Assembly: GCA_002269645.1 (NCBI GenBank)
Contig: NIVC01002401.1
Location: forward strand, 1 to 57,082
DNA length: 57,082 nt
From: Macrostomum lignano
Taxonomy: Eukaryota
Direction: 5' to 3'
Part shown: positions 1,105 to 26,385 of the stretch, piece by piece
Layout: each line of letters starts with the position of its first letter
How positions within the stretch are numbered: position 1 is the stretch's first letter
Made by a program: the position numbers and the translations under genes
The notes under the pieces: generated by a model
The model's database searches: none
Told to the model about the DNA's origin: nothing
What the model saw: only the letters and a program-made list of their open reading frames with translations

Positions 1105-1165
1105 ATGCAGAGAGTCTTCAGGGCGCTTCTGCTGGTGTCGATTTTGTGCAGCTTCTCTGCCGCAA
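1105..1165 (+). CDS. Lectin exon 1, signal peptide MQRVFRALLLVSILCSFSAA
   Basis: ATG at 1105, basic N-terminus, hydrophobic core, SAA cleavage site, phase-1 donor GTGAGT at 1166 matching the phase of the domain exons. Confidence 0.8.
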
Positions 1166-4100
1166 GTGAGTTGCCACCCTTTGTTTTCTGTGCTCAATGT
1201 TTCTCAAGTAAACTTTGAATGGTGCCATGCAGTTAGCATGCTTAGCAGTACTTAGTGTCCTCCGTTATGACAAACATTTTCTGGCTGTCTGCATCTGTAT
1301 TTGGGAACTTTTATACGTAGTTGATAGCAAATTCAGAAAAGACAAGAGGTCAGCTGCCTCCCTGTGAGTGAACTAAAAACTAAGGGAGACTCTAAGCAAG
1401 TTGAAAAATATTTCTTTCCAAACAAAATATACCATCGCTGCAGAGTAGCATGATCCTTCTGGTACCAGCAGTGAAATCAGAAGACAGCTGCGGGGAATTC
1501 AGAGAATAATCAACAGGCTGGATCCCCGTTTTTCTGATGAGTGGCTGCGAACCCTTCAATTATTTTTTTGAAGCAATTACTGGCAACGGAAAGTGGCATT
1601 CAAAAATTAGTACTCACACAAGTCACATAACTTTTACTTACCAACAATTCTCCAGTTCGGCTGCCCCTGCAGGCATGCAGGCAAAGCTCCACGCACACTC
1701 CGTGCCATCGAGCCATCGACGGCAACACTAACCAGAAGTGGTCCGGCAACTCCTGCTCGCACACCAACATGCAGAACAAGCCGTGGTGGCAGGCCAACAC
1801 GCCCAGACTGGCGCACTTCCACACAGTCCGGATTTACAACCGCCTCTGCGGACCCGGCTGCTCGTCGCACCAGAACAACATTGTGATCAAGGTGGACGGC
1901 GTTCCTTGCGCCTCGTACCACTCGAGCCACTACTTCTCTGTCAAGACGTTCCATTGCAACCGAGTCGGGCAGATTCTGGAGATCCACAGCACTGTGCGGT
2001 CCTATCTGATGCTGTGCGAGGTGCAGGCATTCGGAAAATGGGCTTCACTGGCCCACACTGGACGTAAGCTTGCTTAAAATAAGCTTCTACCGCTGAGGGA
2101 TTAAAATATATTTCCAATTAGAAAATAAATTAACACGCATGTCTACAGGCTTACACTCGTAGCTTGCATATATTATTAGCCAAAATTGATTGGCATCTAC
2201 TATCATGCTAAGAGCTACAATACATCCACAAGTTTACATTTTGCACATTAGTACAGATGACTGCAAACACCGATTTCAGACCGAATACCGCTCAGTGACT
2301 GCAGACAGAGCTCAACTCACACACCCTGTCGAAGAGCCATCGACAATAACCTCAACCAGCATTGGTCCGGAAAGTCGTGTGCTCACACTAAGCGTCAGAA
2401 GAACCCATGGTGGCAGGCAAACACGAACCGTCTCGCTCACATCAAGCAGGTCCGAATCTACACTCGACTGTGCACTCCGCCTTGTAGGGTGTACTTTAGA
2501 CACATCGTCGTCAAGGTCGACGGCCACATCTGTGCCAGACACAAGGGCGTTGGACTCGGTTCGACAATCACTCTCAGCTGCAACAGGGTCGGGCAGATTG
2601 TAGAGATTCAGGCTATGGCAAAAAGAACGTACCTGATGTTGTGCGAAGTCCAGGTTTTCGGAACGTATGCTTCTCTGGCTCATAAAGGCGGTAAGTCACG
2701 CAATCCAGTCTATCATTTAGTACAGATTTTGCATTCTGATGCTAACAAGGATATTTTATGATGCATTCGTACCGAAACCATTTTAGCCAAACTGCCTCTG
2801 CAAGACTGCAGACAGAGCTCAACTCACACACCCTGTCGGAGAGCCATCGACAATAACCTCAACCAACACTGGCCTGGAAAGTCGTGTGCTCACACTAAGC
2901 GTCAGAAGAACCCATGGTGGCAGGCAAACACGAACCGGCTCGCGCACATCCAGCAGGTCCGAATCTACACTCGACTGTGCACTCCGCCTTGTAGGGTGTA
3001 CTTTAGACACATCGTCGTCAAGGTCGACGGCCACATCTGTGCCAGACACAAGGGCGTTGGACTCGGTTCGACAATCACTCTCAACTGCAACAGAGTCGGG
3101 CAGGTTGTAGAGATTCAGGCTATGGCAAAAAGAACGTACCTGATGTTGTGCGAAGTCCAGGTTTTCGGAACGTATGCTTCTCTGGCTCATAAAGGAAGTA
3201 AGACTACAGGGCATGAATACGCACATGGTTATTTCTCCATCGAATTCGATCGTACAATCATGTCGCCATTAGGAGCGAAACTATACGATAAAACTTTCCC
3301 AATCTAGGTATGCTGCCCTTACAAGAGTGCAGGCAGAGTTCAACGCACACGCCATGTCGGAGAGCCATTGATAACAACCTGAACCAACACTGGCCTGGAA
3401 AGTCCTGCTCGCACACGAAGATGCAGAAAGGCCCGTGGTGGCAGGCGAGCACAAACCGATTGGCTCACATCAGACAGGTGCGAATCTACGCTCGGCTCTG
3501 CGGACCAGTGTGCTCCAGATACCTGAAGGACCTAATCATCAAGGTTGATGGGCACGTTTGTGCCAGATACACATCGACGAAGGGCTACCTCTCGACCCAC
3601 ACGTTCGAGTGCAACAGAGTTGGCCAGGTAGTCGAAATTCGGTCTCGAGCGAAGACCTATCTGATGCTGTGTGAGGTTCAGGTTTTCGGAAACTACGCCT
3701 CGTTAGCACACAAAGGACGTAAGTTTTTTTTTACAGAGGTGGCAGTTTTAGGCATACTCTGACAAAATTACATGTTCGACCGACATTACATGTTACCGAC
3801 AGATTATCGAAAATATGTTTTGCAGGTCTGCTGCCACTTCAAGACTGCAGACAGAGCTCAACTCACACACCCTGTCGAAGAGCCATCGACAATAACTTCA
3901 GCCAGTATTGGTCCGGAAAGTCGTGTGCTCACACTAAGCGTCAGAAGAACCCATGGTGGCAGGCAAACACGAACCGTCTCGCTCACATCAAGCAGGTCCG
4001 AATCTACACTCGACTGTGCACTCCGCCTTGTAGGGTGAACTTTAGACACATCGTCGTCAAGGTCGACGGCCACATCTGTGCCAGACACAAGGGCGTTGGA

Positions 4101-7100
4101 CTCGGTTCGACAATCACTCTCAGCTGCAACAGAGTCGGGCAGGTTGTAGAGATTCAGGCTATGGCAAAAAGAACGTACCTGATGTTGTGCGAAGTCCAGG
4201 TTTTCGGAACGTATGCTTCTCTGGCTCATAAAGGAGGTAGGATTTTGAGAGTATCTATTTAGCTTTTCTGTTTGATATTTGGGGTAAGATCGGAGTAAAA
4301 GTGCTAGTAGAACTAAACAAATAGACAGTCAATTCAAGTAGTAATGTTTCTTTTGATTAGAAAGAAGATGGAGTTGCAAAAAGCGAATTGTATGAATGAG
4401 AATATCTGTCTAATATCCTTTAGTGACCAGCCAGACACAAAGAGACACATTGAGACAATTGGCGAGCAAGGCGAGCAACGCGCGGGAGGCGCACAGCGAA
4501 AAAGCGACCTCCAAACCCAAAGCGAGCAAGCGAACAAAAGCAGAAGGCTGGGAGCTAAAACAAAGCAGAGACACCACCGGCAAAAGTTACAGCAGCCACC
4601 GCTGCCTGGTGAAACTGGGGGAGATAACGCTGCACAGCCTCACTTTTCCAATCACCAATGCGCATGATATCAGACACTGGGAGGCCTAGCACAGACGCCC
4701 AGGTAGCTCCTCCTCGTCGCAGACTGTGCGCGGAGTAAGAGCCAGCTGCAGCCTGTCGGTCTCGTCAACTAGTCGTCGCATCTCCGTCAGCATTGTAGGT
4801 GACACAGGCCGCTTTCGGTTCACGCGCAGTCCGAGGACCCGTTTAGCGCCGCGTAGGAGAAGAACCGCTGAAGCGTGATTAGTCAGGTCCGGCGACGAGT
4901 TAATTCGGAACCAGAGCGACAGAGAGCTGTAGACTGCCGAAATGCTGCTGTAGGCATGTAGCCGTGTGCCGATCAGACTGGCCAAATAGTTCAGCAGGCT
5001 CGTGACGTTGCAGGACACTGGATCGCAGCCGGTATGGCGGCAGAACTCCCGCCACTCACGGACGTGTCTGTTGACTGCCTGCGCCGACCTTGGTGCGTAC
5101 GCAGCGCTCAGCAGCGATGTGGCGCGGCTGCTAAGAGAGTCTGACGCAGCTGGGCGGCCTGAAAATGAAGAAAGGAGGCGGTCGCCAAGCCAAAAGCATG
5201 CTGATGCAGTGATTGTAGAATGCTTGGGCAAATAAAACCATAACAGCGGAGTAAAAAGTTTAACAGCTGGCCTCGCTCATGCAACCGCGAGGCAGCGTCA
5301 GCAAAAATTTAAAAATCACCAGGCACATGAAACGCGCGAATGCTCATCCCAAAATGCAAACACACCAGAGCCACCGTCTACAGCAGCCGCTGCAACGCAG
5401 GACACTTTGAAACGCCTTTGTTGATGATGTGACAGGCCGTCTGGTTGTCGCAGTAGATGCTCACCTTGCAACCTTTGAGCACATCCCTCCACCTCATCAC
5501 TGCCAGCAGAGAGACCAACGCTTCCTTGTAGTTGATCGGCAGGTTCGCGAAGACTGATCCTGCATCCTTCTCCCAGTCCAGGTAGCACCAGTCAAACAGA
5601 CCATCCTGGTCACGCAGCAGCGCCGCACCACCTCTGCCTCACGCATCGGACTCCATCGCCACAACTCGATTGTAGCTCGGCCACAGCTGCACCCATCGGC
5701 ACGCCTGTAACGCCACCTTCCACCAATTCAGCTGACTGCGTAACCCGGAGTCGACCAGCGTTCGCTGTCCGCGCCGTAAGGTGTTGCACCGCTCAATCAG
5801 CTCACGCAAGAAGGTCCTTCCGCAACTGATGACCTGAGCTGCCCACCCCAACTTGCCAATGATCTGTTGGAGGGCCCACTGACTAATCCTCACCTTGGCT
5901 GACTCGGAACCAACCAGGTTGATCAACTTCTTTGCCTTCTCATCCGGCAGCTTCTTGATTCCTTCCACAGTGTCGAACTCAATTCCAAGGAATGACATCC
6001 GCTGCGCCGGCAGCTGGCACTTGGCCGGATTGACGGTGAATCCCAGCCGAGTCAGCAAGTCAATCAGATCGACGTAGAAGCGCTGGCAGTTCTCCTGCGT
6101 CCCGCAGTAGGCAAAGTCGTCCAGGTAAGACTCGGTGTTGATGAAGCCTCTGCGCACCATCATCAGATGAATCGCATTGCTCAGGCGTTGAAAGCACGTG
6201 ACCGAGGCTGCCGCCCCGAACGGCAGGCGCGTATCAAACATGTAGGTGGGAGTGGCGCAGCCAGGAAACTTGAACTTGAGACCGGTGTTGACGAATTCTC
6301 CTGGGTGCACTCCACATGCGCGGTATGCTTCACTCCGGTCAACTTTAGTCATGTAGCAGCCTCTCGTTAACTTTCTTGCGAAGTTTTCAGCGCTTGAAAA
6401 TCGCAACTTCTCATTGCTCTCCCAGTGCGCGTTCACCGACAGATTGTCCGGCCGACTGCAATCGTGAATTAGGCGTACCCGACCGTCATCCTTCGGCAGG
6501 GCACCCAGCGCACTCACAATCCGAGGCCGCCACTTATCCGAGCACCGACGGTAGCGGTCAAGGCGAATTTCTCTCAGAATTTGCATTTGAACAGCTTCAG
6601 CGTAAACATTCACAGACTCGTAGTTGCTGACCTCGACAGACTTCAGGTTTTCTCGCTGCACATTCGTAATCCGAAATCCCTCAGACACACCATCAAGAAT
6701 AAACTGCTTTCTGTCCAGCGGCAGATCAATCGACTCCAACTCTTCCATCCAAGCCTCCAGCTTTAGGTCGGTTGATAAAACAGAGGAAGTTAAAACAGGA
6801 TCGACGCGCAGTCAGTGCAGAGGCCTGCTCACCTCAGCACCGTCATCCCTGTGCGCCATCGCCGCTGAGTGGCCAAGTCCACAACGCCGGCACCGATGAG
6901 CGAAACGGCAGTTCCGCCTTGAGCATCCAGCTTCCTTGTTGAAATCAAAGCAGGGTGGCTGCAGGCTTTGTCTTTGCACCCGGTCAACTCTGGCAGTCGG
7001 TGCACTCTGTGGGGCCATCAGGTAGGTGGCAACTCGACCAAGGTCGGATCCGCGCGACTCTCATGACGTCTCGCCATCTTCACTCAGTCTTCACTCGTCA

Positions 7101-10100
7101 TTAAACCTCATGACTCGAGCCTTGTCAAACCCGAGGTCAAACAGCTCGCCAATGCGCGCAGTGTAGCGCAGATAGTCACGCAACTCTGACACATCAGGCT
7201 GGCCGCCCAGCCCGCTCTTCACCAACCTGCCATCATCCAGCAACTTCAGAATGATTCGAGCATTCGCCGAGATCCAGTCTCCAAACGTCAGCGAGTCAAC
7301 AACAGCTTCCTTCACTCTGAAGGTGACTCTCCCTGATTTGTCAATGGACTGAGTCACTCCTGCTTCCTGCTGCTTCCGCTTGTTAATAAACTCAGGGATT
7401 CGGTACACCTTGCCTACAAACCGACTGGGCTCTTGCTGGGCAGCATCTTCATCGTCAGACCACAGGTTAATGAGCAACTCACCGGGATTCTTTGACGTCG
7501 CAGGCCTTCGCTGAAGTTGGCTGACTTCCGCCTGAAGCAGAGCGGCCTCCTTGCGTAGCTTTAGCAGTCGGAGCTGCTTCTCAGCCTCCACCAGCTCGTC
7601 GTCCAGGCCGCCAGCCGCGTCAGACTCTTGACCATGTTGTACCGAATCGTTCGCGATAGAAGGCAGTTGCCTCTCCGCCATAGCGCCGTTTCTTCTTTTA
7701 CGCGTCGTCACTGCGGCAGCTTCATCTTGCTCCTCGTCCTCGTCGTCCGCATTCTCAAAGTCGGAGGCGATGCCCTCGAGGTGCGCCCTCAGCCGCATTA
7801 AAAGTTCACATTTTTTGCCTTGTGTTGAAAGCCCTAGGCTCTGAAGCTTCTCACGTAGCGCCCTTACAGTGCTAGGCGCTTCGGGTGCAACTGGCTCGTT
7901 AGGGTTTGGCATGATTGTGCAAAAAAAACATTTGCTGGCTGTCTGCATCTGTATTTGGGAACTTTTATACGTAGTTGATAGCAAATTCAGAAAAGGCAAG
8001 AGGTCAGCTGCCTCCCTGTGAGTGAACTAAAAACTAAGGGAGACTCTAAGCAAGTTGAAAAATATTTCTTTCCAAACAAAATATACCATCGCTGCAGAGT
8101 AGCATGATCCTTCTGGTACCAGCAGTGAAATCAGAGGACAGCTGCGGGGAATTCAGAGAATAATCAACAGGCTGGATCCCCGTTTTTCTGATGAGTGGCT
8201 GCGAACCCTTCAATTATTTTTTTGAAGCAATTACTGGCAACGGAAAGTGGCATTCAAAAATTAGTACTCACACAACTCATAACTTTTACTTACCAACAAT
8301 ACTCCAGTTCGGCTGCCCCTGCAGGCATGCAGGCAAAGCTCCACGCACACTCCGTGCCATCGAGCCATCGACGGCAACACTAACCAGAAGTGGTCCGGCA
8401 ACTCCTGCTCGCACACCAACATGCAGAACAAGCCGTGGTGGCAGGCCAACACGCCCAGACTGGCGCACTTCCACACAGTCCGGATTTACAACCGCCTCTG
8501 CGGACCCGGCTGCTCGTCGCACCAGAACAACATTGTGATCAAGGTGGACGGCGTTCCTTGCGCCTCGTACCACTCGAGCCACTACTTCTCTGTCAAGACG
8601 TTCCATTGCAACCGAGTCGGGCAGATTCTGGAGATCCACAGCACTGTGCGGTCCTATCTGATGCTGTGCGAGGTGCAGGCATTCGGAAAATGGGCTTCAA
8701 TGGCCCACACTGGACGTAAGCTTGCTTAAAATAAGCTTCGACCACTGAGGGATTAAAATATATTTCCAATTAGAAAATAAATTAACACGCATGTCTACAG
8801 GCTTACACTCGTAGCTTGCATATATTATTAGCCAAAATTGATTGGCATCTACTATCATGCTAAGAGCTACAATACATCCACAAGTTTACATTTTGCACAT
8901 TAGTACAGATGACTGCAAACACCGATTTCAGACCGAATACCGCTCAGTGACTGCAGACAGAGCTCAACTCACACACCCTGTCGAAGAGCCATCGACAATA
9001 ACCTCAACCAGCATTGGTCCGGAAAGTCGTGTGCTCACACTCAGCTTCAGAAGAACCCATGGTGGCAGGCAAACACGAACCAGCTCGCGCATATCAAGCA
9101 GGTCCGAATCTACACTCGACTGTGCACTCCGCCTTGTAGGGTGTACTTTAGAAACATCGTCGTTAAGGTCGACGGCCGCGTCTGTGCCAGACACAAGGGC
9201 GTTGGACTCGGTTCGACAATCACTCTCAACTGCGACAGGGTCGGGCAGGTTGTAGAGATTCAGGCTATGGCAAAAAGAACGTACCTGATGTTGTGCGAAG
9301 TCCAGGTTTTCGGAACGTATGCTTCTCTGGCTCATAAAGGAAGTAAGACTACAGGGCATGAATACACACATGGTTATTTCTCCATCGAATTCGCTCGTAC
9401 CATCATGTCGCCATTAGGAGCGAAACTATACGATAAAACTTTCCCAATCTAGGTATGCTGCCCTTACAAGAGTGCAGGCAGAGTTCAACGCACACGCCAT
9501 GTCGGAGAGCCATTGATAACAACCTGAACCAACACTGGCCTGGAAAGTCCTGCTCGCACACGAAGATGCAGAAAGGCCCGTGGTGGCAGGCGAGCACAAA
9601 CCGATTGGCTCACATCAGACAGGTGCGAATCTACGCTCGGCTCTGCGGACCAGTGTGCTCCAGATACCTGAAGGACCTAATCATCAAGGTTGATGGGCAC
9701 GTTTGTGCCAGATACACATCGACGAAGGGCTACCTCTCGACCCACACGTTCGAGTGCAACAGAGTTGGCCAGGTAGTCGAAATTCGGTCTCGAGCGAAGA
9801 CCTATCTGATGCTGTGTGAGGTTCAGGTTTTCGGAAACTACGCCTCGTTAGCACACAAAGGACGTAAGTTGTTTTTTTACAGCAAATTATTTCTTTAAAG
9901 AGGTGGCAATTTTAGGCATACTCTGACAAAATTACATGTTCTACCGACATTACATGTTACCGACAGATTATCGAAAATATGTTTTGCAGGTCTGCTGCCA
10001 CTTCAAGACTGCAGACAGAGCTCAACTCATGCACCCTGTCGAAGAGCCATCGACAATAACTTCAGCCAGTATTGGTCTGGAAAGTCGTGTGCTCACACTC

Positions 10101-11480
10101 AGCTTCAGAAGAACCCATGGTGGCAGGCAAACACGAACCGTCTCGCACACATCCAGCAGGTCCGAATCTACACCCGACTGTGCACTCCGCCTTGTAGGGT
10201 GAACTTTAGAAACATCGTCGTTAAGGTCGACGGCCGCATCTGTGCCAGACACAAGGGCGTTGGACTCGGTTCGACAATCACTCTCAACTGCAACAGGGTC
10301 GGGCAGGTTGTAGAGATTCAGGCTATGGCACAAAAAACGTACCTGATGTTGTGCGAAGTCCAGGTTTTCGGAACGTATGCTTCTCTGGCTCATAAAGGAG
10401 GTAAGATTTTTAGAGTATCTATTTCGCTTTTCTGTTTGATATTTGGGGGTAATATCGGAGTGATTGTGCTAGTAGAATTCTACAAATCGACAGTCAATTC
10501 AAGTAGTGAATGTTTCTTTTGATTAGAAAGAAGATGGAGTTGCAAAAAGCGAATTGTATGAATGAGAATATCTGTCTAATATCCTTGACTTTTTTGTTCA
10601 TACAGCACTTCTGCCGCTGAAGCACTGCAGCCAAAGCTCCACCCACACGCCGTGCGCCAGAGCCATCGATGGGAAGCTGGCGCAGCACTTTACTGCAAAG
10701 TCCTGCTCTCATACGAAAATGCAGACGAAGCCGTGGTGGCAGGCAAAGACCATTAAGCCGGCCTTTATCCAACAGGTGCGAATCTACGCCCGCTTGTGCG
10801 GCCCGGTGTGCTCGCGGTATCTCAAAAACATCATCGTGAAGGTGGATGGGAGAGTGTGTGCCAGTTACCACTCCACTGCTGGCTATTTGTCAACGCGGAC
10901 TTTTAATTGCAATCGCTACGGCAGTACAGTTCGAATCGAATCTACTGCCAAGACCTACTTGATGCTGTGCGAGGTCCAGGTGTTGGCCGATACGGCAGGA
11001 AGCCACCAACCCGTGAGCTGAGTTTAGCATTAATCTGCGTGCTTTGTGCTTGAGCTCTGTGTTTGATCAAATTGATGCAGCCTCAAAGCTTCCTTAAATT
11101 TAAATTTCAGACATTGAACCTGGAACTGGTGAGGAGACTGGAACCCATGAGACAGGAACTACTGGTGAGTCGGGATCGCCTTCAGGACATGGAGAAACTG
11201 GGAGGTGGTGAGCTTTGAGAGGCACTGCATTGATGGCCACGACTCATCGGAGCACAAGCTGGGCACGTCCTGGACTACGAAGGTGCCGGCAGAGGGCTAC
11301 TGCTATCACTACTCGTGCACCGAGAAGTCCGAGGCGGGCCCTGTGAGCGTCGACTGCATGGACGCTTCCGGGCACTGCGTGAAGCCGAGCAGCGAGGGCA
11401 CGGACTTTGCCTGCAGATCCGGCTACACCAGCTGCTCTTGCGTCCACCGGGACGGCAGGACGGGCATCATTTTCTCCTGA
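1105..11480 (+). CDS. Secreted multi-domain F-type lectin (fucolectin/FTP, F5/8-like) gene: signal peptide, 10 lectin domains and a probable Cys-rich tail
   Basis: Exons 1105-1165, 1656-2063, 2280-2690, 2787-3197, 3308-3718, 3826-4236, 8308-8715, 8932-9342, 9453-9863, 9990-10400, 10606-11012, then 11111-11480 with unresolved frame. All have AG/GT sites. Each domain shows QSST..RAID.N, CxHT, PWW, V.IY.R and L.LCEV.V, the hallmarks of F-type lectin domains. Confidence 0.85.
1656..2063 (+). CDS. F-type lectin domain exon, type A (copy 1)
   Basis: tccag|TT..AC|gtaag, 408 nt, phase 1-1; RLPLQACRQSSTHTPCHRAIDGN...CSHT...PWWQ...IYNRLCGPGCS...LMLCEVQAFG. Confidence 0.88.
2280..2690 (+). CDS. F-type lectin domain exon, type B
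   Basis: tttcag|AC..G|gtaagt, 411 nt, phase 1-1; RIPLSDCRQSSTHTPCRRAIDNN...CAHT...IYTRLCTPPCRVYF...LMLCEVQVFG. Confidence 0.88.
2787..3197 (+). CDS. F-type lectin domain exon, type B
   Basis: ttttag|CC..A|gtaaga, 411 nt, phase 1-1, paralogous to 2280-2690. Confidence 0.88.
3308..3718 (+). CDS. F-type lectin domain exon, type C
   Basis: tctag|GT..C|gtaag, 411 nt, phase 1-1; MLPLQECRQSST...IYARLCGPVCSRY...LMLCEVQVFG. Confidence 0.88.
3826..4236 (+). CDS. F-type lectin domain exon, type B
   Basis: ttgcag|GT..G|gtagga, 411 nt, phase 1-1. Confidence 0.88.
4555..5231 (-). pseudogene. Tyrosine recombinase of the element, internally deleted
   Basis: N-terminal SAM-like part (AAYAP...WREFC...LLNYLASL...LLLRGAKR...KRPVSP) in ORF 4686-5231. 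C-terminal catalytic part YSAHSLRRGGATWA...IMRIGDWKSEAVQRYL in another frame at 4737-4555. The box I Arg region is missing. Confidence 0.85.
5108..6811 (-). pseudogene. RT/RNase H (pol) of the element with in-frame stops
   Basis: LKLEAW...ALPKDDGRVRLIHDCS...LPFGAAAS...YLDDF...FLGIEFDT, then RNase H ESDA*GRGG...INYKEA...CDNQ...HVPG..*..ADAASR. Stops at 5639-5641, 5378-5380 and 5309-5311. Confidence 0.88.
6812..7912 (-). pseudogene. Gag-like ORF1 with N-terminal SAP-like motif and C-terminal Cys/His zinc finger
   Basis: TVRALREKLQSLGLSTQGKKCELLMRL (SAP-like); CFDFNKEAGCSRRNCRFAHRCRRCGLGH (DIRS/Ngaro gag finger). ORFs 7091-7999 and 6812-7018 are one frame broken by TGA at 7091-7093 and 7061-7063. 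Confidence 0.75.
8308..8715 (+). CDS. F-type lectin domain exon, type A (copy 2)
   Basis: Near-identical to 1656-2063 with the same splice sites. Confidence 0.85.
8932..9342 (+). CDS. F-type lectin domain exon, type B (chimeric)
   Basis: 5' flank and start as exon 2280; 3' end and downstream intron as exon 2787-3197; 411 nt, open frame. Confidence 0.85.
9453..9863 (+). CDS. F-type lectin domain exon, type C (copy 2)
   Basis: Near-identical to 3308-3718. Confidence 0.85.
9990..10400 (+). CDS. F-type lectin domain exon, type B (copy 2)
   Basis: Counterpart of 3826-4236; open frame, AG/GT intact. Confidence 0.85.
10606..11012 (+). CDS. F-type lectin domain exon 10 (unique, outside the duplication)
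   Basis: tacag|CA; LLPLKHCSQSSTHTPCARAIDGK...CSHT...IYARLCGPVCSRY...LMLCEVQVL; likely donor GTGAGC at 11013 (phase 0). Confidence 0.85.
11111..11480 (+). CDS. Probable terminal exon(s) of the lectin: linker plus Cys-rich module (VWC/PSP94-like spacing), frame unresolved
   Basis: Acceptor tttcag at 11110; GC-rich ORF RHCIDGHDSSEHKLGTSWTTKVPAEGYCYHYSC...C...C...C...CSC ending in TGA at 11480. Confidence 0.5.
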
Positions 11481-12660: not shown

Positions 12661-14503
12661 CACCTGTCTTTCAAACATTACAAATGCATAAATTAACAAA
12701 ATTCTTGCTTGCAGTTCATTGCTTTGTTGCAAATCTCAAATACAGAATTCAGCTAGTTTGAACTTTAGCTCACGGAGTCAGAAAACAAGGGAATGCAGGA
12801 ATAGAGTTATTGGGAACCCGCTCTGGGAGCTAAGTTAGAATATTCTGTAGTGAAAACTGCGTGAAAAGCAACGGATTGTCTGCAAATTTGCTGACTGCAT
12901 GGAATGCAGCACCGTGCACATCATATTCTCGGGGTCTCCTGCCGGGCCCTTAGCCAGGAAGTTGAAATCAAGGACAACTTGAGACTGCATGTTTTCTAGT
13001 GGTCCTTGGTTTAAATATTGAAGAACCTCAAATAAATCAACCTCTCTAATATCGGAAATCGGAATTTACGAGGGCAACAGTTTATCAATCTATGTGATTA
13101 AAAGGCCATTTTTCAAGCGAAAAATCTTTTCGCGAGTGGACGCTTCATTCATTGCAAGACACGTCCAGCTGCTGGGCCGCACAAGATGAAGTGCCTCGCG
13201 CCATCTCAGCTGGAATCCAACAAACCAGCGCGGCCGGGCAGAGCGGTTTCCCCTTCACCCAAGAGTTGCACTTTTCCACAGCAAAGGTGGTCACAGAAGA
13301 TCCCAGCGGCGCTCGGTTCAGATGCGAGAAAACACAGCAAAAGCATCCCGATACTTCTGCGTCTTTTTCTGACCCAGAAAAGCCCCGTTTGCCGGCGGTT
13401 AAAAAGGTCAAATTCTTCGCGCGCTGGTACCTCGTATTTACCATTCTGCAAAGCAGTTTCTGCAATCTTCTCGGCCGTTGCAAATAAGCCGGTTTTCTGC
13501 AGAGAAAAATGACGTTTTCTCTTAGGTATTGGCAAGCAAATAATATTTATTCACTGTCTTGTCGGAATCTGGCCCGAACTGCGATCGAGCAGGCTTTGAA
13601 TGCTTTAGAATTTTAGAAGTATCCACCCCCTGCCTTGGGAATCACCAGGAAGGTCGCACTTTACAATCAGAATTTGTGTTAATGTTTTCACCCCGGAAAC
13701 TAGTTTTCGAAAACTGGCAGCTTTAATCCAACTCCAGCCATAACTCTCCACTCCCTCCTCAGCAGCCTAAGCTGGTGCCTTGTGACGCGAATCGCATTAC
13801 CCACATTTGAATCGAGAACTGCAAGCTTGATGTGAGTTTAGACTTCTACTAGTACATGTTGCTGAGTGCATCTAATGTATTGAAAAAAGTTCGATTGATA
13901 CTAAACGGACTCTGAAATCCGACTATTTCATACATCTTGGAGGCTACAAAGCTGCTTGTTCATCTCTACTGCAAATTTCAGTACAAATGCATGCCATACT
14001 AAAACATGTCAGCTCGCTCGGTAGCAGGCAAAATGTTTTCATGTTTGCTCTTGAGCAGCGGTTTATCGTCTCAGCTGAAATGCTACAGCTGCGCATGAGG
14101 ACCTGGGGTGCCAAAAACCGCTGCAGGAGTGACATGTGCAGCGCAAATATTTTCGAACTAGCTTGGCCAGTGTTAAAATTTGGAGAGAATTACGACGGAG
14201 CTAAAGTGTCCGTAGCTGCAGAACGTGGTTGCAGAAAAAACGGCTGTATTTGTTAGCTTACTAGGTCTTCTTGAAGGCAGATTGAGCTTCCGAGAAGTGG
14301 CCAGGTATGACCGCAGAAAAAATAAGCTCGTTCGCTCAGAACAGCAAACCAAATGCACTTATGCATAGCAGCCAGGCAGCCAGTCCAGTATCTACAGACA
14401 GCCAATTGAAGGCCCACTAGCAGGGCTCCGAAGAGTCACTGATATAAGGCTGACCGAGCGAAGAAAATTTCAAAGCCAGCCCTTCTGCTCTGCCGGATTC
14501 GAA

Positions 14504-16629
14504 ATGCAGTCGATTGGCCTCGCCGCTCTCGCTCTGCTCTGCGCCGCCGCCTGCGCATCGGCGGCCAGCCCAGCCCGATACCCGCTGGTCCTGGTCTCCT
14601 GCGACGGCTTCCGCTACGACTACCTCAACTGGTACCCCAACGAGACGCAGTTCCTGAGGTCGCTCATCAAGCAGGGCGTGCACGTCAAGTCCATGAAGCC
14701 GGCCTTTGCCACAAAGACCTTCCCCAACCACTGGACCATCGCCACGGGACTCTACCAGGAGAGCCACGGCATCGTCGGCAACAGCATGTACGACCCGCTG
14801 TTCAACGCCTCCTTCAACAAGGGCACTCGAGATGAGCGCTGGTGGAACGCATCCGAGCCGATCTGGATCAACGCGAAGAAGCAGGGACTGAAGTCGGCCA
14901 CGTTCTTCTGGCCCGGCAGCGAGGTCTCGTTCAAGGGTGTTCGTCAGGACTACTGGTTCAACTACAGCGGAAGTGTGAGCTTTGAGACCCGGGTGAGCAC
15001 CGTGCTGGAGTGGATCACCGAGAAGGACGTGCAGATGGCCACAATGTACCTACATGAGCCCGACGGCACCGGACATGATTTCGGTCCTGAGTCTCAAGAA
15101 ATGAGGAAAGTTTTAAAGAAAGTTGACGACACCATCCGCTCGCTATTCGAAGGACTGAAGGCGAAGAAATTCTCAGATAAAGTCAATGTCCTGATTGTAT
15201 CAGACCACGGTGAGGACATTCTTAGTTTTGCCTAAAAGGAGGAAGCCTGAATGATTAAGCTGTATATTAATTGCTTGAGTTTTCTTTGTAACAGTTTCAT
15301 TTCTAGTGTGCGAACCTTCAAATCGAAAACTTATCTCGGACCAGATTTTTTAATCTAAAACCAACTTCCAAGATACAGCAAAGAGAGAGAAACAAGATTT
15401 TTATGTGTCGCAGAAAAGAATGAGCAAAACGCGGGAAGCACAGGTAACAGCTCTGTGATTTAGTATGTCTTTTTTCCTGACTTCCGTTCACTTCTGGCCG
15501 CTGACTGGGCTTTCTCTCAGCACAGGAGCTGAGCTGTTTGGCTGTGCATTTTATCTGAGCCGGTTAGCTGAGGCTTGCCATTGACCAGCAGTTGCAGGCA
15601 AGAATTGACGAAACTGTCAAAATTCGTTAGCCTTATCAGTAGTCCGCTATCTGAGATTCCCGCTGCAGCAGGGGCTGGGCGCAGAGTACAATTTTCTGTT
15701 TTTAACGCAGTTCAAACTGCCATCCATAGTGGAAGGAATCCATTCTCAGCTATCCAAGCGAGTATTCTGTAGGGTCGCCACGCCAGCCAAATGTCCCTGG
15801 CTGTACACTCAATATTCATTGCTGTGACAGGGGCAGCAACTGAAAACTGTAGGGAGTTGCGATCCCAGTACTGTCGGGACTTAAGAGGGCCAGTCAGGCA
15901 TATTTTAATACATTGTATTGGCACAACGATCCACATGTGTTTCACCCAGATTTTCCATCAATGTAAGCACTGCACCATTTGATACATATGCAGAATAGAA
16001 CCGACATTTGCATCATTTCAGGCATGATGGGCATGACGCCTGACAAGGTGATCCGCCTGAACAGCAGCATGGACGAGCTCGTAGACCGAGTCCTGGACAG
16101 CGGACCGCTGCTGGCCATGAATGCCAAGCCGGGTAAGCGGAAGCAGCTGGTGGAGTACCTCAACAACCAGGTGCGCCAGCGCAACCTTTCCATGCGCGTG
16201 TTCGACAAGGACAGTCTGCCGGAGCGACTCCACTACGCCAAAAACCGCAGGACGCCCGAGGTGCTCGTGCTGCCCGACCAGGGCTACCTGGTGCTGACCA
16301 GCAAGGATACGAAGCCAGTAAGTTCCGGTCACCACGGCTTCGACAACAGCTACAGCGACATGCGGGTGCCGATGTTCGCCGTTGGGCCCAGTTTCCGTCA
16401 AGGCGTCGAGCTAAACGGCGTAAACGACGGTAGCTTCCGTCAGGTGGACATCTACGGTCTGATGTGCCACCTGCTGCAGATCCGGCCGCAGCCAAACAAT
16501 GGGTCCGGCGAGTTGCTGCCACAGATGCTGAAGTCTTCAGCCCGCAGTGCCACGCGCGCCTCTAGCTGGCACCCGCTATTCGGCCTGATTTTCCTGGCTT
16601 GGGCTTTGCAGAAACTGATCATGACCTGA
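14504..16629 (+). CDS. Ectonucleotide pyrophosphatase/phosphodiesterase, ENPP4/5-like (~437 aa; exons 14504-15209, 16022-16629)
   Basis: Signal peptide; LVSCDGFRYDY, TKTFPNHWTIATGLYQESHGIVGN, YLHEPDGTGH, SDHG|M, GHHGFDN, VDIYGLMCHLL; hydrophobic C-terminal tail; phase-1 intron. Confidence 0.93.
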
Positions 16630-17392: not shown

Positions 17393-18623
17393 TTGAATCC
17401 ACTGCACTGTCTGAATCCACTGCACTGTCTGAATCCACTGCACTGTCCTGAATCCACTGCACTGTCTGAATCCACTGCACTGTCTGAATCCACTGCACTG
17501 TCCTGAATCCACTGCACTGTCCTGAATCCACTGCACTGTCTGAATCCACTGCACTGTCTGAATCCACTGCACTGTCCTGAATCCACTGCACTGTCCTGAA
17601 TCCACTGAACTGTCTGAATCCACTGCACTGTCCTGAATCCACTGCAGTGTCCTGAATCCACTGCAGTGTCCTGAATCCACTGCACTGTCCTGAATCCACT
17701 GCACTGTCCTGAATCCACTGCACTGTCCTGAATCCACTGCACTGTCCTGAATCCATTGCACTGTCCTGAATCCATTGCACTGTCTGAATCCACTGCACTG
17801 TCTGAATCCACTGCACTGTCCTGAATCCACTGCACTGTCCTGCATCCACTGCACTGTCCTGCATCCACTGCACTGTCCTGCATCCACTGCACTGTCTGAA
17901 TCCACTGCACTGTCTTGAATCCACTGCACTGTCCTTCATCCACTGCACTGTCCTGAATCCCTGCATTGTCCTGAATCCACTGCACTGTCCTGAATCCACT
18001 GCACTGTCCTTCATCCACTGCACTGTCCTGAATCCATTGCACTGTCTGAATCCACTGCACTGTCCTGAATCCACTGCACTGTCCTGAATCCACTGCACTG
18101 TCCTGAATCCACTGCACTGTCCTGAATCCACTGCACTGTCCTGAATCCATTGCACTGTCCTGAATCCATTGCACTGTCTGAATCCACTGCACTGTCTTGA
18201 ATCCACTGCACTGTCCTTCTCCTTCATCCACTGCACTGTCCTGCATCCACTGCACTGTCCTGCATCCACTGCACTGTCCTGCATGCACTGCACTGTCTGA
18301 ATCCACTGCACTGTCTTGAATCCACTGCACTGTCCTTCATCCACTGCACTGTCCTGAATCCCCTGCATTGTCCTGAATCCACTGCACTGTCCTGAATCCA
18401 CTGCACTGTCCTTCATCCACTGCACTGTCCTGAATCCCCTGCATTGTCCTGAATCCACTGCACTGTCCTGAATCCACTGCACTGTCCTTCATCCACTGCA
18501 CTGTCCTGCATCCACTGCACTGTCTTGAATCCACTGCACTGTCCTTCATCCACTGCACTGTCCTGCATCCACTGCACTGTCCTGAATCCACTGCACTGTC
18601 CTGAATCCACTGCACTGTCCTGC
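17393..18623. repeat. Minisatellite of 18/19 bp units (C)CTGAATCCACTGCACTGT, ~1.2 kb
   Basis: About 65 tandem units read directly; explains the repetitive ORFs at 17270-18634. Confidence 0.97.
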
Positions 18624-19035: not shown

Positions 19036-19788
19036 TTAATCGAAGGGCGATACGCATTCACAAAGGGCGCCAAAGAGACCCATATCGGTGATGTCCACTA
19101 CGTCCACTATGGTCATGTGTCGAGCGGTGGCCATTTCGCTAAATCCACTCGGTTCACCAGTTCCCCACACAGAGCCGATCGTGATGTTGCAGCCGACCCA
19201 AAACCAGCCGTCTGCCTCCTGGGCTCCCGGAAACACCCGGTAGCCGCCCAGGTACATGGGATAGGTGGGGGAGTGAGCGACAAACAGGGCATTCACGTGG
19301 CTCAGCTCAGCTGCGTCAGCGACATCGGCCATGATCACCAGGCCCGGCTCCGACTCGCACCTTCCTCTCTGAACCGCCCAAGTTGCGTTGTTCTTCAGCA
19401 CCCGGTACTTCACTCCGCACAGCTCGTCGCCGTAGCCGGGAGGACACAGCGAGCCCGCCGAGAGTCCCGGCTGCCGCTTCACGAACAGGCGGCCTCTCCT
19501 GGAGCAGCCGCAGTCCCTCACCAACTTGCTGCACTTGTCGAACACGAACAGCTGGCACAGACCGTCGGCGGTGGTGAAGGCCTGGCAGCGCTGATCGGAG
19601 CCGCAATGCAGAGAGCACGGCAGGTCCGAGGTGATGCCGCTCAGGTTGCGGGTGAAGGCGCTGCGGATGCAGAGGGAGCCGTCCTTGACCTCTGAGAAGG
19701 CCACAGGGCACTGCTGGCTGCCCTGAGCCGCCACCAACAAGGCCAAGGTAGCCAAGATTCGAATCGATAGCTGAACTCCTTCTGGCAT
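19036..19788 (-). CDS. Secreted PAN/apple-like plus C-type lectin-like protein (single exon, 250 aa)
   Basis: Signal peptide MPEGVQLSIRILATLALLVAA; CSLHCGSDQRCQAF...CQLF (PAN); CPPGY...KY...TWAVQRGRC...YLGG...WFWV...WGTGEP...ALCE (CTLD). Confidence 0.75.
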   Translation of the reverse strand: MPEGVQLSIRILATLALLVAAQGSQQCPVAFSEVKDGSLCIRSAFTRNLSGITSDLPCSLHCGSDQRCQAFTTADGLCQLFVFDKCSKLVRDCGCSRRGRLFVKRQPGLSAGSLCPPGYGDELCGVKYRVLKNNATWAVQRGRCESEPGLVIMADVADAAELSHVNALFVAHSPTYPMYLGGYRVFPGAQEADGWFWVGCNITIGSVWGTGEPSGFSEMATARHMTIVDVVDITDMGLFGALCECVSPFD

Positions 19789-22822: not shown

Positions 22823-24971
22823 ATGGCAGACCGCAACAGCGAAAGTCGCACCGACCTCGTGTTCGTGGAGGGGAAGCTGGGAGCAGCATACGGAGCAACC
22901 GATGGCGGCGGAGCGGAGATTAAGTTCAGGTTGGCCGCACAAATAGGGCATCAAGTTAAATGCATTACGAGGTCATAAAGCATGCATGAAGAATAAAAAC
23001 AACCTTTCCAGGGACCAGTCCTCCAGAGCGCTCTACGAGGCCGAACCGAGAAGCGGCCTCTTGGGCGTGGCCGACCGCTTCGGCGCAAAGTTTTTCCCTC
23101 TCGGCTACTGGAGCGAGTTCCGCGAGATCGCCAAGCTGCACCTGCCCGCCTTCCTCACCTGCTTCTTCCAGTTCCTGCTGCAGACAATCAGCGTCATCAT
23201 GTGCGGCCACCTGTCCAAGGAGCAGCTGGACGCTGTCGCTCTCGCCTGCACCCTCATCAACGTGGCCGCCCTGAGCATCGGTCTCGGACTGTCCACCGGC
23301 TGTGACACCTACTTTGCTCAGACCTTCGGCAGCCGACACAAGAAGCGAGTCGGACTGTACCTGCAGCGTAGCCTACTCGTCATGTACATGTTCCTGGTGC
23401 CCGTGTACTGCCTGCACCTGAACATCAAGCCAGTGCTGCTGCTACTGGGCCAGGACCCGATCATCAGCGACATGACCGCTCGCTACATCCTCATCTTCAT
23501 GCCCGGCGTGTTTTTCGACTACACTTTCTTGGTGCTGGCGAGGTATCTGCAGACGCAGAACCGCGTCAACCCGCCGCTCGTGTGCGCAGTGATCGGCAAT
23601 GTGTTCAACGCGGTGTCGCAGTACATCGCCATCTACGTGATGGGCTTCGAGTTCGAGGCCTCGGCGGTGTGTCAGGCCGCCTCGCTTTTCGTGATGTGCC
23701 TCTGCATCCTGGTGTACATCCGCGTGTTTCGCGTGTTCGAGGAGACTTGGGACGGCTGGAAGACCGAGGCTCTCTACGACATCGGCGGATTCATCAGGCT
23801 GGCGGTTCCGGGACTGCTGCTCGTATCGCTGGAGAACATCAGCTTTGAGGTTAGTGTATATTTTTTCAGTTGCAGTAAATTGGTCGGCACAAAGAAATTG
23901 CCACTGCATTTTATATTGCCATATTAGCGATGCTCTTGAAGACCAAAATTCAAGACCAAACCGTTTAAAACTTTTTTCTATACTGGACTCGCATTTGACT
24001 GCATGCACCTGCAGGTGGGAACATTCCTGGCGGGCAGTCTGAACGCAGTGCAGCTGGCAGCGCAGGCCATTCTATTCCAGAGCATCAGCCTGCTGTATAT
24101 GGTGTGCATCGGCATGTCCATCGCGGTGAACATCCGTGTTGGTCAGCACCTGGGCGCTGGCAACATTGAGAAGGCCAAGCATACCTGCAAGGTGGCCGTG
24201 ACAATGATTTTAGTGACATCAACTTTGATTTGCGTATTTTTCGCTACCTGCAGGGAGCAAGTGGCGAGCATCTTCACCAGCGATCCGGAAGTGAAGGCGG
24301 CAACTGTGGAGCTGCTGGCTGTGTACGCCCCGTACCCCTACTTTGATGGCCTGTCTGCCACCGCGGCCGGCGTCCTGAAGGGCAGCGGCCAGCAGCTGAT
24401 CGGTGCCGCCGTCAACATCGTCGCCTACGACTTCATCTCGCTGCCGATCGGGATTCCGCTGAGTCTGCTCACCCCGCTGCAAATGAAGGGGTTCTGGATC
24501 GCAATGTTGCTCGGCATCGTGCTTCAGAGCATTGTATTCTGGCTTATCATCTGGCGGACCAACTGGGAGAAGCAAGCAGCCGCAGCGCTGTCCAGAGCGT
24601 CCGGTCAGCAGATCAAAAAGACGCCTAAGAGACGTCGTAAAAATTTGAGCAGAGAAGATCAAACGGAGCCGCTACTGGCCTCAGAAATTAAGCCCTCTCA
24701 CGTCCGGTCGGCCTCGCGAGTGTACTCGACTCCGTACGAGAGTGAGGTGGAGCTGGACTTGGCTCAGCCTCCGAGTCTGCCGCCGCTGCGGCCTGTGCTG
24801 ATCCGGCGGCTGGCGACGTGGCTGTGCCTGGCCGTCTGCTTGGCTGCTGCCATTGTGCTGCGGTTATTCCAAGGTGTGCTGGTTCCGCTTAGGTGGTTTG
24901 ACCTGTGCCTGCCAGCTAGAAACGGCTCAGAGTCCCTGAAGCTTGAGTCCAATATAACTTTCTGTAGTTGA
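22823..24971 (+). CDS. SLC47A: MATE family multidrug and toxin extrusion transporter, paralogue 1 (~633 aa; exons 22823-22929, 23012-23849, 24015-24971)
   Basis: ISVIMCGHLSKEQLDAVALA, GLSTGCDTYFAQTFG, VGLYLQRS, RYLQTQN, IRLAVPG, RVGQHLGAG, GVLKGSGQQ..GA, GFWIAM; intron phases 2 and 0 are consistent. Confidence 0.92.
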
Positions 24972-25684: not shown

Positions 25685-26385
25685 ACCGAATCGTACCGAA
25701 CCGAAATGTAACGATCCGAAACCTACCAAACCGAATCGTACCGAACCGGATCCTTCCTCTAATCGTACCGAACCGGATCCTACCTATAATCGTACCGAAC
25801 CGGATCGTACTGAACCGAATCCTACCTCTAATCGTACCGAACCGGATCGTACTGAACCGAATCCTACCTCTAATCGTACCGAACCGGATCGTACTGAACC
25901 GAATCCTACCTCTAATCGTACCGAACCGAAACCTACCAAACCGAATCGTACCGAACCGAATCCTACCTCTAATCGTACCGAACCGGATCGTACTGAACCG
26001 AATCCTACCTCTAATCGTACTGAACCGAATCCTACCTCTAATCGTACCGAACTGGATCCTACCTCTAATCGTACCGAACCGATTCGTACCGAACCGAATC
26101 GTACCGAACCGAATCGTACCGAATCGAATCGTACTGAACTGAACCGAACCGTACCGAGCCGAATCGTAACGAACCGAATCGTACCGAACCGAATCGTACG
26201 GAATCGAATCGTACCGAACCGAATCGTACTGAGCCAAATCGTACCGAATCGAATCGTACCGAACCGAATCGTACTGAGCCAAATCGTACCGAATCGAATC
26301 GTACCGAACCGAATCGTACTGAACCAAATCTGACCGAACCGAATCGTATCAAACGGAATCGCATTACAACCGCACCGAATCGCCT
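25685..26385. repeat. Pentamer-derived tandem repeat (ACCGA/ATCGT) with 42 bp and 15 bp higher-order periods
   Basis: CCTACCTC recurs at 25821, 25863 and 25905 (42 bp period); the right half is ACCGAACCGAATCGT (15 bp period). Confidence 0.93.

What the first reader, a model, noticed from the sequence alone, without database searches (positions are those of the whole stretch)
1272..10586. Retrotransposon sits exactly at the junction of the intragenic duplication
Seen: copy 1 ends at ...ATATCCTT (4420) and element sequence starts at 4421. The element ends at ~7925 and copy 2 starts at once, with sequence from intron 1 (1272). The layout is segment-TE-segment, like a 3 kb target-site duplication. 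Inference: it arose by unequal crossover between two insertions of the same family at 1272 and 4420 on different chromatids, or by integration of a recombinase-made circle carrying host DNA. Copy 2 lacks the promoter and signal exon, so it can only add domains to the same gene. This would be direct TE-driven growth of a lectin from 6 to 10 domains.
Basis: partly seen in the sequence, partly recalled or inferred. Interest (0 to 1): 0.75.

Follow-up and report, generated by a model that had tools for sequence, protein, structure and literature searches.

The report
Retroelement bridging a duplicated lectin-gene block
In a flatworm (Macrostomum lignano) lectin-like gene, a 3-kb block of domain exons is repeated in tandem with one tyrosine-recombinase retroelement exactly between the copies; the layout is real and inherited, but it is a new example of a known kind of event (like the fly Bar duplication), and how it arose is unproven.

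Summary
Copy 1 is 1272-4420, the insert is 4421-7925, and copy 2 is 7926-10586. The window is a whole contig (NIVC01002401.1) of the Macrostomum lignano Mlig_3_7 assembly. Two other contigs carry identical junctions but differ by SNPs and indels, so this is not a one-contig misassembly. A fourth contig has neither the element nor the duplication and runs uninterrupted across both breakpoints.

The insert is an antisense tyrosine-recombinase (DIRS-order, Ngaro-like) retroelement: SAP-gag, CCCH, RT, RNase H, YR. It has no terminal or split repeats. It was nearly intact on arrival, because one sister contig keeps a full recombinase ORF. Its 5' end appears to be the family's natural end.

All ten domain exons are symmetric (phase 1-1) and in frame. 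Annotated models use only 3-6 domains, the tail is frameshifted in this contig, and unit number varies without the element (L001 has 7). So "6 to 10 domains" is only partly supported.

Element and duplication are clearly coupled. I favour one aberrant joining event that bridged two chromatids (about 0.4) over Bar-type crossover between two insertions (about 0.25). Interest is moderate: a new member of a known kind.

The parts
1105..1165 (+). Exon 1 of the lectin-like gene (BOX15_Mlig000828g2): signal peptide MQRVFRALLLVSILCSFSAA, donor GTGAGT. Not duplicated.
   Evidence: identical N-terminus in P0121/P0185/P0186
1272..4420 (+). Copy 1 of the duplicated block: the 3' part of intron 1 plus five F-type-lectin-like domain exons. 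E2 1656-2063 (A), E3 2280-2690 (B), E4 2787-3197 (B), E5 3308-3718 (C), E6 3826-4236 (B, donor GTAGGA). It then runs 184 nt into the following intron.
   Evidence: Pfam F5_F8_type_C_2 4.9e-5; database relatives named FTP/fucolectin domain proteins
4237..8307 (+). Composite 4071-nt intron between E6 and E7. It contains the end of copy 1, the whole element (antisense), and the intron-1-derived start of copy 2 with the E2-type acceptor. Splicing E6 to E7 gives ...AHKG|VRLPLQAC..., in frame.
   Evidence: the same junction peptide is in gene model P0122
4421..7925 (-). Tyrosine-recombinase retroelement, 3505 bp here and 3888 bp in sister contig L008. No terminal or split repeats. 13-21 nt leader and 134-nt trailer.
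7094..7912 (-). gag ORF with SAP domain (7873-7778). Premature stops at 7093-7091 (this lineage only) and 7063-7061 (shared with L008). CCCH finger at 6952-6890. Natural gag stop at 6814-6812.
   Evidence: Pfam SAP 5e-8; comparison with L002 and L008
5234..6748 (-). RT (6748-5642, YLDD at about 6125) and RNase H (5638-5234). Premature stops at 5641-5639 and 5311-5309 (this lineage only) and 5380-5378 (shared with L008).
   Evidence: Pfam RVT_1 5.3e-11; RT_RNaseH 3.1e-4 after masking stops
4555..5231 (-). Tyrosine recombinase. N-terminal SAM-like part 5231-4746. A 385-bp deletion point at 4740/4741 removes the box I Arg region. C-terminal HSLRRGGAT...GDWKSEAVQRY at 4740-4621. ORF ends at about 4558, with the stop at about 4557-4555. 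The ORF is complete in L008.
7926..10586 (+). Copy 2 of the block: intron-1-derived 382 nt, then E7 8308-8715 (A), E8 8932-9342 (B), E9 9453-9863 (C), E10 9990-10400 (B), then 186 nt of intron.
10606..11480 (+). Unduplicated 3' end of the gene: E11 (domain D) 10606-11012 and the last exon 11111-11480 (linker plus Cys-rich tail). Relative to L001 this contig has 1-nt homopolymer deletions at about 10983 and about 11200. As assembled they frameshift the tail, and the annotated model stops at 11218.

Best explanation
Shown. This is a real, inherited tandem duplication of a ~3.1-kb block of symmetric domain exons in an F-type-lectin-like gene of Macrostomum lignano. One complete unit of a tyrosine-recombinase retroelement, antisense, is the only DNA between the two copies. 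The element was nearly intact, with a full recombinase ORF, when it arrived. It has since decayed inside what is now a 4.07-kb intron. The ten domain exons stay in frame.

Inferred. Element and duplication arose in one aberrant event. A full-length element DNA (a circle opened at its attachment point, or a full-length linear cDNA) was joined at one end to the chromatid end at 4420. Its other end was joined at 1272 on a second chromatid (sister, homologue or subgenome copy). The element therefore acted as a bridge in a non-homologous unequal exchange. The partner product would be a deletion. Later gene conversion among the repeat units and among subgenome copies blurred the copies' divergence.
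For: Real and inherited. Three contigs (window, L007 at 99.83%, L008 at 99.0-99.3%) share identical junctions. They differ by a 385-bp deletion, a 212-bp insertion and SNPs.

Empty homologous locus. L001 is continuous across both breakpoints. Its states at fixed copy1/copy2 differences are interleaved, so it is not a simple revertant.

Element identity and state.
- Pfam SAP, RVT_1, RNase H, Phage_integrase.
- L008 has a complete YR ORF and lacks 3 of the 5 premature stops.
- In four relatives, similarity ends 17-21 nt upstream of the gag ATG. That is exactly where the window element ends, so this is a natural 5' end.

Single event rather than two insertions.
- There are no single-insertion alleles among the 4 contigs.
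- There is no other copy of the family in the window, L001, L007 or L008.
- There is no relative above 60% identity among 5.8 billion proteins, which include two M. lignano proteomes.
- Junctions are blunt or have 0-3 nt microhomology. There is no short TSD and no repeated flanking trinucleotide (the expectation for YR integration is from PMC7192593).

Linear extrachromosomal cDNA is the main DIRS-1 intermediate and can be integrated when supplied (PMC7192593).

Frame kept. Exons are 408/411 nt, phase 1-1.
Against: - No precedent is known to me for a YR retroelement bridging two chromatids.
- A complete element with a natural end at the junction is equally what the Bar-type model predicts.
- The element's 3' end could not be compared with any relative, so it may be truncated.
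- Upstream flank plus copy 1 are about twice as far from L001 as copy 2 plus downstream flank. This hints that the halves come from different chromosomes. That fits an inter-homologue event of either kind and does not discriminate.
- Four contigs from one inbred line are a tiny sample of alleles.
- The mosaic divergence (0/411 in C exons, up to 6% in introns) prevents dating.
Confidence: 0.4

Rival explanations
1. Bar-type origin. Two independent insertions of the same family occurred in the same orientation, one at 4420 on one chromosome and one at 1272 on another. Unequal crossing over within the element (homologous, or catalysed by its own recombinase) then left one element between tandem copies and none at the flanks.
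For: - It is the accepted explanation for the same layout at Drosophila Bar (PMC13322080).
- The element is complete, with a natural 5' end and an intact recombinase at the time.
- There is no element at the outer flanks.
- The divergence asymmetry suggests the two halves come from different chromosomes.
Against: - It needs three rare events.
- The family looks very low-copy: no other copy in about 110 kb of M. lignano DNA examined and none in the protein collections.
- There is no single-insertion allele among 4 contigs.
- The two target sites share no convincing motif, and no flanking trinucleotide repeat is seen.
Confidence: 0.25
2. One ordinary insertion at 1272 came first. Later a non-homologous unequal exchange occurred with an element-free homologue. 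One break fell in the element's 3' trailer (or 7 nt outside it) and the other at 4420.
For: - The 5' end at the TE|copy 2 junction looks canonical, while the other end is untested.
- The element's left end TTAGTGAC resembles the host GTTATGAC that lies just upstream of 1272. This could be a remnant of the original left flank.
- The relative L004 has a much longer non-coding spacer, about 750 nt with 220-nt repeats, against about 150 nt here.
Against: - The 7-nt resemblance needs an indel and has roughly a 1-5% chance probability after allowing for multiple looks.
- It requires a break to fall within a few hundred bp of the element by coincidence, and it requires a heterozygous state.
- No allele with the element alone at 1272 was seen.
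Confidence: 0.12
3. Circle carrying host DNA. The recombinase excised a circle containing the element plus the 3.1-kb block from one chromatid, using a pseudo-site. The circle then re-integrated by homologous recombination into an element-free homologue.
For: The element encodes a YR that was intact at the time. The layout segment-TE-segment is what homologous integration of such a circle gives.
Against: - It needs insertion, aberrant excision at a pseudo-site, and re-integration into a TE-free partner.
- The two host breakpoints share no recognisable recombination core with the element ends.
- There is no precedent.
Confidence: 0.08
4. Replication-based template switching (FoSTeS/MMBIR). A stalled fork at 4420 copied a genomic element copy elsewhere as 'filler' and then re-primed at 1272.
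For: Blunt or 0-3 nt microhomology junctions. Tandem duplications with templated insertions are a known class (mechanisms listed in PMC3744419).
Against: The insert is one exact coding-complete unit that starts at the family's natural 5' end. Arbitrary switch points would hit that by chance at about 1 in several hundred. No donor copy is nearby.
Confidence: 0.07
5. Assembly artefact. The assembler mis-joined subgenome copies through a shared repeat.
For: The Mlig_3_7 assembly has many chimeric scaffolds and three subgenomes that differ by 1.4-2.4% (PMC10733133). This contig has homopolymer indels.
Against: Three separate contigs with private differences share both junctions. A gene model from an older assembly (P0122) has the B-to-A exon order that only a duplicated locus can give. 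The whole structure (10 kb) is within long-read length.
Confidence: 0.03

Closest known systems
Drosophila Bar(1) duplication with a roo (B104) element at the junction
   Same: Tandem direct duplication with a single complete retroelement exactly between the copies and none at the outer ends. It is explained by exchange between different chromatids (PMC13322080).
   Different: Bar is 203 kb of whole genes and the element is an abundant LTR retrotransposon. Here the duplication is 3 kb of exons inside one gene, and the element is a rare tyrosine-recombinase retroelement. The two single-insertion progenitors are not documented here.
Maize Ac/Ds alternative (reversed-ends or sister-chromatid) transposition making tandem direct duplications
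   Same: One transposition-related event inserts element ends into the sister chromatid. It gives segment-TE-segment plus a reciprocal deletion, with no element at one outer breakpoint (PMC3744419).
   Different: Ac is a cut-and-paste DNA transposon. It needs two nearby termini and leaves a matching 8-bp TSD. Here the element is a retroelement, there is no short TSD, and there is no second element.
Ngaro-type tyrosine-recombinase retrotransposons (order DIRS)
   Same: gag, RT/RNase H and YR in that order, no methyltransferase, and a zinc finger in gag (PMC4157794). A 42%-identical relative (L004) has 220-nt direct repeats downstream of YR.
   Different: The window element and its orthologues have no split direct repeats or inverted repeats, and only about 150 nt of non-coding DNA. 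gag carries a SAP domain.
Retroelement cDNA captured at double-strand breaks or bridging rearrangement breakpoints (yeast Ty1; from my own knowledge, not checked here)
   Same: Extrachromosomal element DNA becomes the joint between two chromosome ends by non-homologous or microhomology joining.
   Different: Captured Ty1 cDNA is often truncated or rearranged. Here the unit is complete, and the host is an animal germ line.

Membership tests
Tyrosine-recombinase retrotransposon (order DIRS) | Reverse transcriptase domain | tested here: met
   Pfam RVT_1 5.3e-11, 43 bits against a cutoff of 29.6. There are 144 RT homologues at E<=1e-10, the best 58-60% identical.
Tyrosine-recombinase retrotransposon (order DIRS) | Tyrosine recombinase in place of an integrase or endonuclease | tested here: met
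   L008's orthologous copy has a complete ORF with the LRKSS, KTIQF, HSLRRGG and W..S......Y motifs. The window copy aligns to the L006 YR at 46% over 56 aa, E = 3e-12. L006 hits Phage_integrase at 1.8e-5. The window copy alone scores only 0.0097, below Pfam's cutoff.
Tyrosine-recombinase retrotransposon (order DIRS) | RNase H after RT | tested here: inconclusive
   RT_RNaseH 3.1e-4, 21.3 bits against a cutoff of 24.8, after masking two stops. The region is collinear with the RH part of the 535-aa RT/RH ORF of L002.
Ngaro group | No methyltransferase domain between RNase H and YR | tested here: met
   RH ends at 5234 and YR starts at 5231, so there is no room for another domain. No MT hit in Pfam.
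Ngaro group | Split direct repeats (A1 ... B1-A2-B2) with the internal repeats downstream of YR (PMC4157794) | tested here: not met
   No direct repeat of 16 nt or more links the ends or lies in the trailer of the window copy. The distant relative L004 does have 220-nt repeats there.
Bar-type TE-mediated tandem duplication | Tandem direct copies, one element at the joint, none at the outer flanks | tested here: met
Bar-type TE-mediated tandem duplication | Progenitor chromosomes with a single insertion at each of the two sites | tested here: inconclusive
   The four contigs of this locus in one inbred line are three with duplication plus TE and one with neither. No population data were available.
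Bar-type TE-mediated tandem duplication | The junction element is a left/right recombinant of two copies | not testable with these tools
   No other copy of the family could be retrieved.
Target-site duplication made by the element's own integration | Short duplication of fixed length from staggered target cleavage, identical on both sides | tested here: not met
   The repeats are 3149 and 2661 bp. YR integration is expected to leave at most a repeated trinucleotide (PMC7192593), and none is seen.
Alternative transposition (Ac/P type) | Cut-and-paste element termini plus a matching short TSD at the duplication endpoints | tested here: not met
   The element is a retroelement without TIRs, and there is no short TSD.
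F-type lectin (FTP) domain proteins | FTP / F5_F8_type_C_2 fold repeated in tandem | tested here: inconclusive
   A single domain scores 24.3 bits against a cutoff of 27.8. The closest database proteins are named FTP / fucolectin domain-containing and carry PF22633 and PF00754. Sugar binding was not tested.

The most novel reading that the evidence does not exclude
Integration of a tyrosine-recombinase retroelement can itself join two sister chromatids or homologues at staggered positions. This would make a kilobase-scale tandem duplication in a single step. It would be a retroelement counterpart of Ac 'alternative transposition' and a direct route to domain-number growth in repeat-domain genes.
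Probability: 0.15. Interest if true: 0.7.

Novelty: new member of a known kind. Interest (0 to 1): 0.4.

Why it matters
This is a clean, base-resolved animal example of a mobile element physically coupled to an in-frame exon-block duplication. An empty homologous locus and three diverged copies of the event sit in one assembly. That makes it testable in a tractable model flatworm whether a recombinase-type retroelement can cause such duplications in one step, and whether the enlarged lectin is expressed. It also shows that this lectin locus changes unit number readily without any TE (5, 6, 7 and 10 units), which tempers the claim that the TE drove the gene's growth.

Tried and rejected
1. Looking for other copies of the element family to define its termini. 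The RT search's best hit was 58-60% identical. A combined gag+YR query timed out. The gag search gave one 57% hit. No copy was found in the window, L001, L007 or L008. The 3' terminus therefore remains undefined.

2. Dating the event from copy divergence. I abandoned this. Divergence ranges from 0/411 (C exons) to 6% (introns). L008's copy 2 carries copy-1 states, and the window's copy 2 carries L001 states. That is gene conversion.

3. An early inference that the element was already dead on arrival, based on 5 stops and a deleted YR. I withdrew it once L008 showed an intact YR and sense codons at 3 of the 5 stop positions.

4. L001 as a revertant by recombination between the copies. Its states at fixed differences are interleaved, not 5'-copy 1 / 3'-copy 2, so a simple revertant is not supported.

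5. Three-sequence 'which copy groups with L001' test. Three taxa give branch lengths only. With seven sequences the asymmetry (L001 = copy 2 at 20 fixed sites, = copy 1 at 6) drops to 11 against 6 events after collapsing clusters, which is not significant.

6. Reading the 847-bp repeat pair at 23009/30317 as LTRs. They are two MATE-transporter gene copies.

7. A common recombination core at the two host sites. Both have GAC next to the break, which has a 1/64 chance. The observed junctions do not fit a GAC-core exchange.

Full report
OBSERVATION

The window holds a direct repeat with a unique 3505-bp insert between the arms. BLAST gives 1272-2695 = 7926-9347 (98.2%) and 2804-4420 = 8949-10586 (95.8%). 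Copy 2 is one ~507-bp unit shorter than copy 1.

HOST GENE

- Exon 1 (1105-1165) encodes a signal peptide.
- Every domain exon is 408 or 411 nt with phase-1 boundaries, so any block of them can be repeated without breaking the frame.
- Copy 1 has five exons (types A-B-B-C-B), copy 2 has four (A-B-C-B), and a tenth (D) follows at 10606.
- The predicted E6-to-E7 splice across the insert reads ...AHKG|VRLPLQAC....
- One domain hits Pfam F5_F8_type_C_2 at 4.9e-5, below the cutoff.
- The closest proteins are Macrostomum lignano 'FTP/fucolectin domain' proteins.

SOURCE AND SISTER LOCI

A cluster look-up showed that a 738-aa M. lignano protein lies on a contig of exactly 57,082 bp. The window is therefore NIVC01002401.1 of assembly GCA_002269645.1, gene BOX15_Mlig000828g2. 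The same assembly has three more contigs with this locus.

- L001 (NIVC01000868.1) is collinear and 98-99% identical in both flanks. It runs uninterrupted across the equivalents of 1272 and 10586. It has no element and no second A unit, but it does have seven domain exons, A-B-C-B-C-B-D.
- L007 (99.83% identical over 10.6 kb) and L008 (99.0-99.3%) carry the same copy 1-element-copy 2 layout with identical junction 40-mers.
- They have private differences. L008's element has 385 bp that the window and L007 lack. L007 has a 212-bp A-tailed insertion 4 bp before the end of copy 2. The window and L008 elements differ at 44 sites.

M. lignano has three subgenomes that differ by 1.4-2.4% (PMC10733133). 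The simplest reading is that the event is present in two of them and absent from the third. A gene model from an older assembly (P0122) has the domain order C-B-A-D with the predicted junction peptide. It differs from the window by single residues. A one-contig misassembly is thus very unlikely.

THE ELEMENT

It lies on the minus strand.

- gag has a SAP domain (Pfam 5e-8) and a CCCH finger.
- An in-frame natural stop follows, then RT (RVT_1, 5.3e-11), RNase H (RT_RNaseH, 3.1e-4 after masking stops) and a tyrosine recombinase.
- There is no room for a methyltransferase. The coding plan is therefore Ngaro-like as defined in PMC4157794.
- The defining split direct repeats are absent, so I do not file it as a canonical Ngaro.
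- Relatives from metagenomes are 40-60% identical. One of them (L004) is assembled as two head-to-tail units with 220-nt repeats after YR.

Compared with the intact relative L002, the window copy has five premature stops and a 385-bp out-of-frame deletion. By position, the deletion removes the box I arginine region of the recombinase. L008 keeps a complete recombinase ORF and sense codons at three of the five stop positions. So the element was close to intact when it arrived, and most decay came later.

In four relatives, similarity extends only 17-21 nt upstream of the gag ATG (a T/A-rich run, then (C)TGC..A.TCATG). Beyond that point their flanks are unrelated: L002's is AT-rich and L010's is GC-rich. 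The window element ends at exactly that point. The TE|copy 2 junction is therefore probably the element's natural 5' end. The 3' end (134 nt after the YR stop) could not be compared with anything.

JUNCTIONS

Against the empty site, the left junction is blunt. The right junction is ambiguous by at most AAA. There is no short target-site duplication. There is also no repeated flanking trinucleotide, which is the mark expected of YR integration (PMC7192593).

Two small oddities remain unexplained:
- Both host sites have GAC beside the break.
- The element's left end TTAGTGAC resembles GTTATGAC just upstream of 1272.

HISTORY

Divergence between the copies is a mosaic:

| Segment | Copy 1 vs copy 2 |
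|---|---|
| C exons | 0/411 |
| A exons | 1/408 |
| B exons | about 3.5% |
| Introns | 0.9-6% |

Across contigs, the copy 1 sequences are nearly identical. L008's copy 2 carries copy-1 states at many sites, and the window's copy 2 shares ten states with L001. Gene conversion between the copies and between subgenome copies is evident, so the event cannot be dated.

At 26 fixed copy1/copy2 differences, L001 matches copy 2 at 20 and copy 1 at 6. The sites are interleaved, so L001 is not a simple recombinational revertant. The asymmetry hints that the two halves have different ancestry, as do the flanks (the upstream flank is 1.5% from L001, the downstream flank 0.7%). It is not significant once clustered sites are collapsed.

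MECHANISM

The exact placement of the element at the joint shows that insertion and duplication are coupled. The layout with no flanking elements excludes ordinary crossover between two elements on one chromosome. As argued for maize Ac duplications, that would leave three copies (PMC3744419).

The remaining routes all need an exchange between two chromatids. I rank them as follows.

1. One aberrant event in which a complete element DNA bridged the end at 4420 and the start at 1272 (0.4). This is favoured by parsimony, the apparent rarity of the family, the absence of single-insertion alleles, and the non-homologous junctions. Linear extrachromosomal cDNA is known as the main DIRS-1 intermediate (PMC7192593).
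2. Bar-type crossover between two insertions on different chromosomes (0.25). This is the accepted model for the same layout at Bar (PMC13322080).
3. A prior insertion at 1272 followed by a non-homologous exchange (0.12).
4. A host-carrying circle (0.08).
5. Template switching (0.07). This is disfavoured by the natural 5' end and the exact unit length.
6. Artefact (0.03).

CONSEQUENCE FOR THE GENE

The structure can encode ten domains in frame. But the annotated models on these contigs use 3-6 domains: P0185 takes E2 plus copy 2, P0186 takes copy 1 plus D, and P0187 is A-B-D. Only P0122 crosses the joint.

This contig also has two homopolymer deletions that frameshift the Cys-rich tail. They may be real or may be assembly errors.

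Unit number varies without the element. L001 has seven units, and copy 1 has an extra B unit with no counterpart. pN/pS between the copies is 0.55 overall. 'TE-driven growth from 6 to 10 domains' is therefore possible but not shown.

VERDICT

This is a new member of a known kind (a TE-bridged tandem duplication) involving an unusual, repeat-less tyrosine-recombinase retroelement. Interest is moderate.

Noticed in passing
window ~10983 and ~11200: Two 1-nt homopolymer deletions (TTT to TT, GGGG to GGG) in coding sequence relative to L001. They shift the Cys-rich C-terminal tail out of frame, and the annotated protein P0185 ends in the aberrant tail. They could be real pseudogenisation or long-read assembly errors.
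   Followed up: partly
L007 ~19475-19686 (equivalent to window 10582/10583): A 212-bp insertion with an A-rich tail and an AATAT/ATAT flanking repeat, 4 bp upstream of the copy 2 boundary. It is present only in L007 and looks like a short non-autonomous retroposon.
   Followed up: no
window 3308-3718 vs 9453-9863: The two C-type exons are identical at all 411 nt, while the adjoining introns differ by 3-6% and the B exons by about 3.5%. This suggests recent gene conversion or unusually strong constraint on this domain.
   Followed up: partly
window 2787-3197 (E4): An extra B-type exon in copy 1 with no counterpart in copy 2 or L001. It differs at 21 or more nt from every other B exon and is present in all three duplicated contigs. 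Unit number at this locus changes independently of the TE (L001 has A-B-C-B-C-B-D).
   Followed up: partly
window 6814-6812; L002 ~1530-1600: In this element family gag ends at a stop codon, and RT continues in the same frame a few codons later, in both the window copy and the intact relative. This suggests RT expression by stop-codon read-through or re-initiation.
   Followed up: no
L004 1-7532: A 42%-identical relative from a metagenome is assembled as two perfect head-to-tail units (period 4286 bp), with a 220-nt direct repeat in the YR-to-gag spacer. It may be a tandem array, or a circular form assembled round twice.
   Followed up: no
window 1262-1274, 4417-4430, 10583-10592: Both host breakpoints have GAC beside the break (CCTT|GAC and TATGAC|AAAC). 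The element's left end TTAGTGAC resembles the GTTATGAC just upstream of 1272. This may be chance (about 1-5%) or a trace of an earlier junction.
   Followed up: partly
window 22986-24971 and 30369-32169: Two tandem copies of a MATE-family transporter gene (Pfam MatE 1e-27 to 1e-31). The first 847 bp are 99.3% identical and the next ~870 bp only 77%. They are not LTRs.
   Followed up: partly
window 17394-18622, 25685-26361, 38315-38823, 41220-41618, 46279-46709, 50968-51453: Six satellite-like tandem arrays (periods 19, 15/42, 41, 23, 25/50 and 42 nt) within 35 kb. The 19-nt array has 65 copies here, and its length differs in L001 and L008.
   Followed up: no
window 1105-11218; L007 10001-20590; L008 10001-20741: The three annotated gene models for the same duplicated structure disagree (738, 963 and 552 aa; 5, 6 and 3 domains). 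Each skips a different set of repeated exons, so annotation of this locus is unreliable.
   Followed up: partly
window 14466-16629; L001 5476-6987 and 18340-19277: Phosphodiesterase-family (PF01663) genes flank the lectin gene on both sides in the sister contigs. Window 14466-15214 matches the upstream copy at about 94.5%, so this is an older local duplication around the lectin gene.
   Followed up: no
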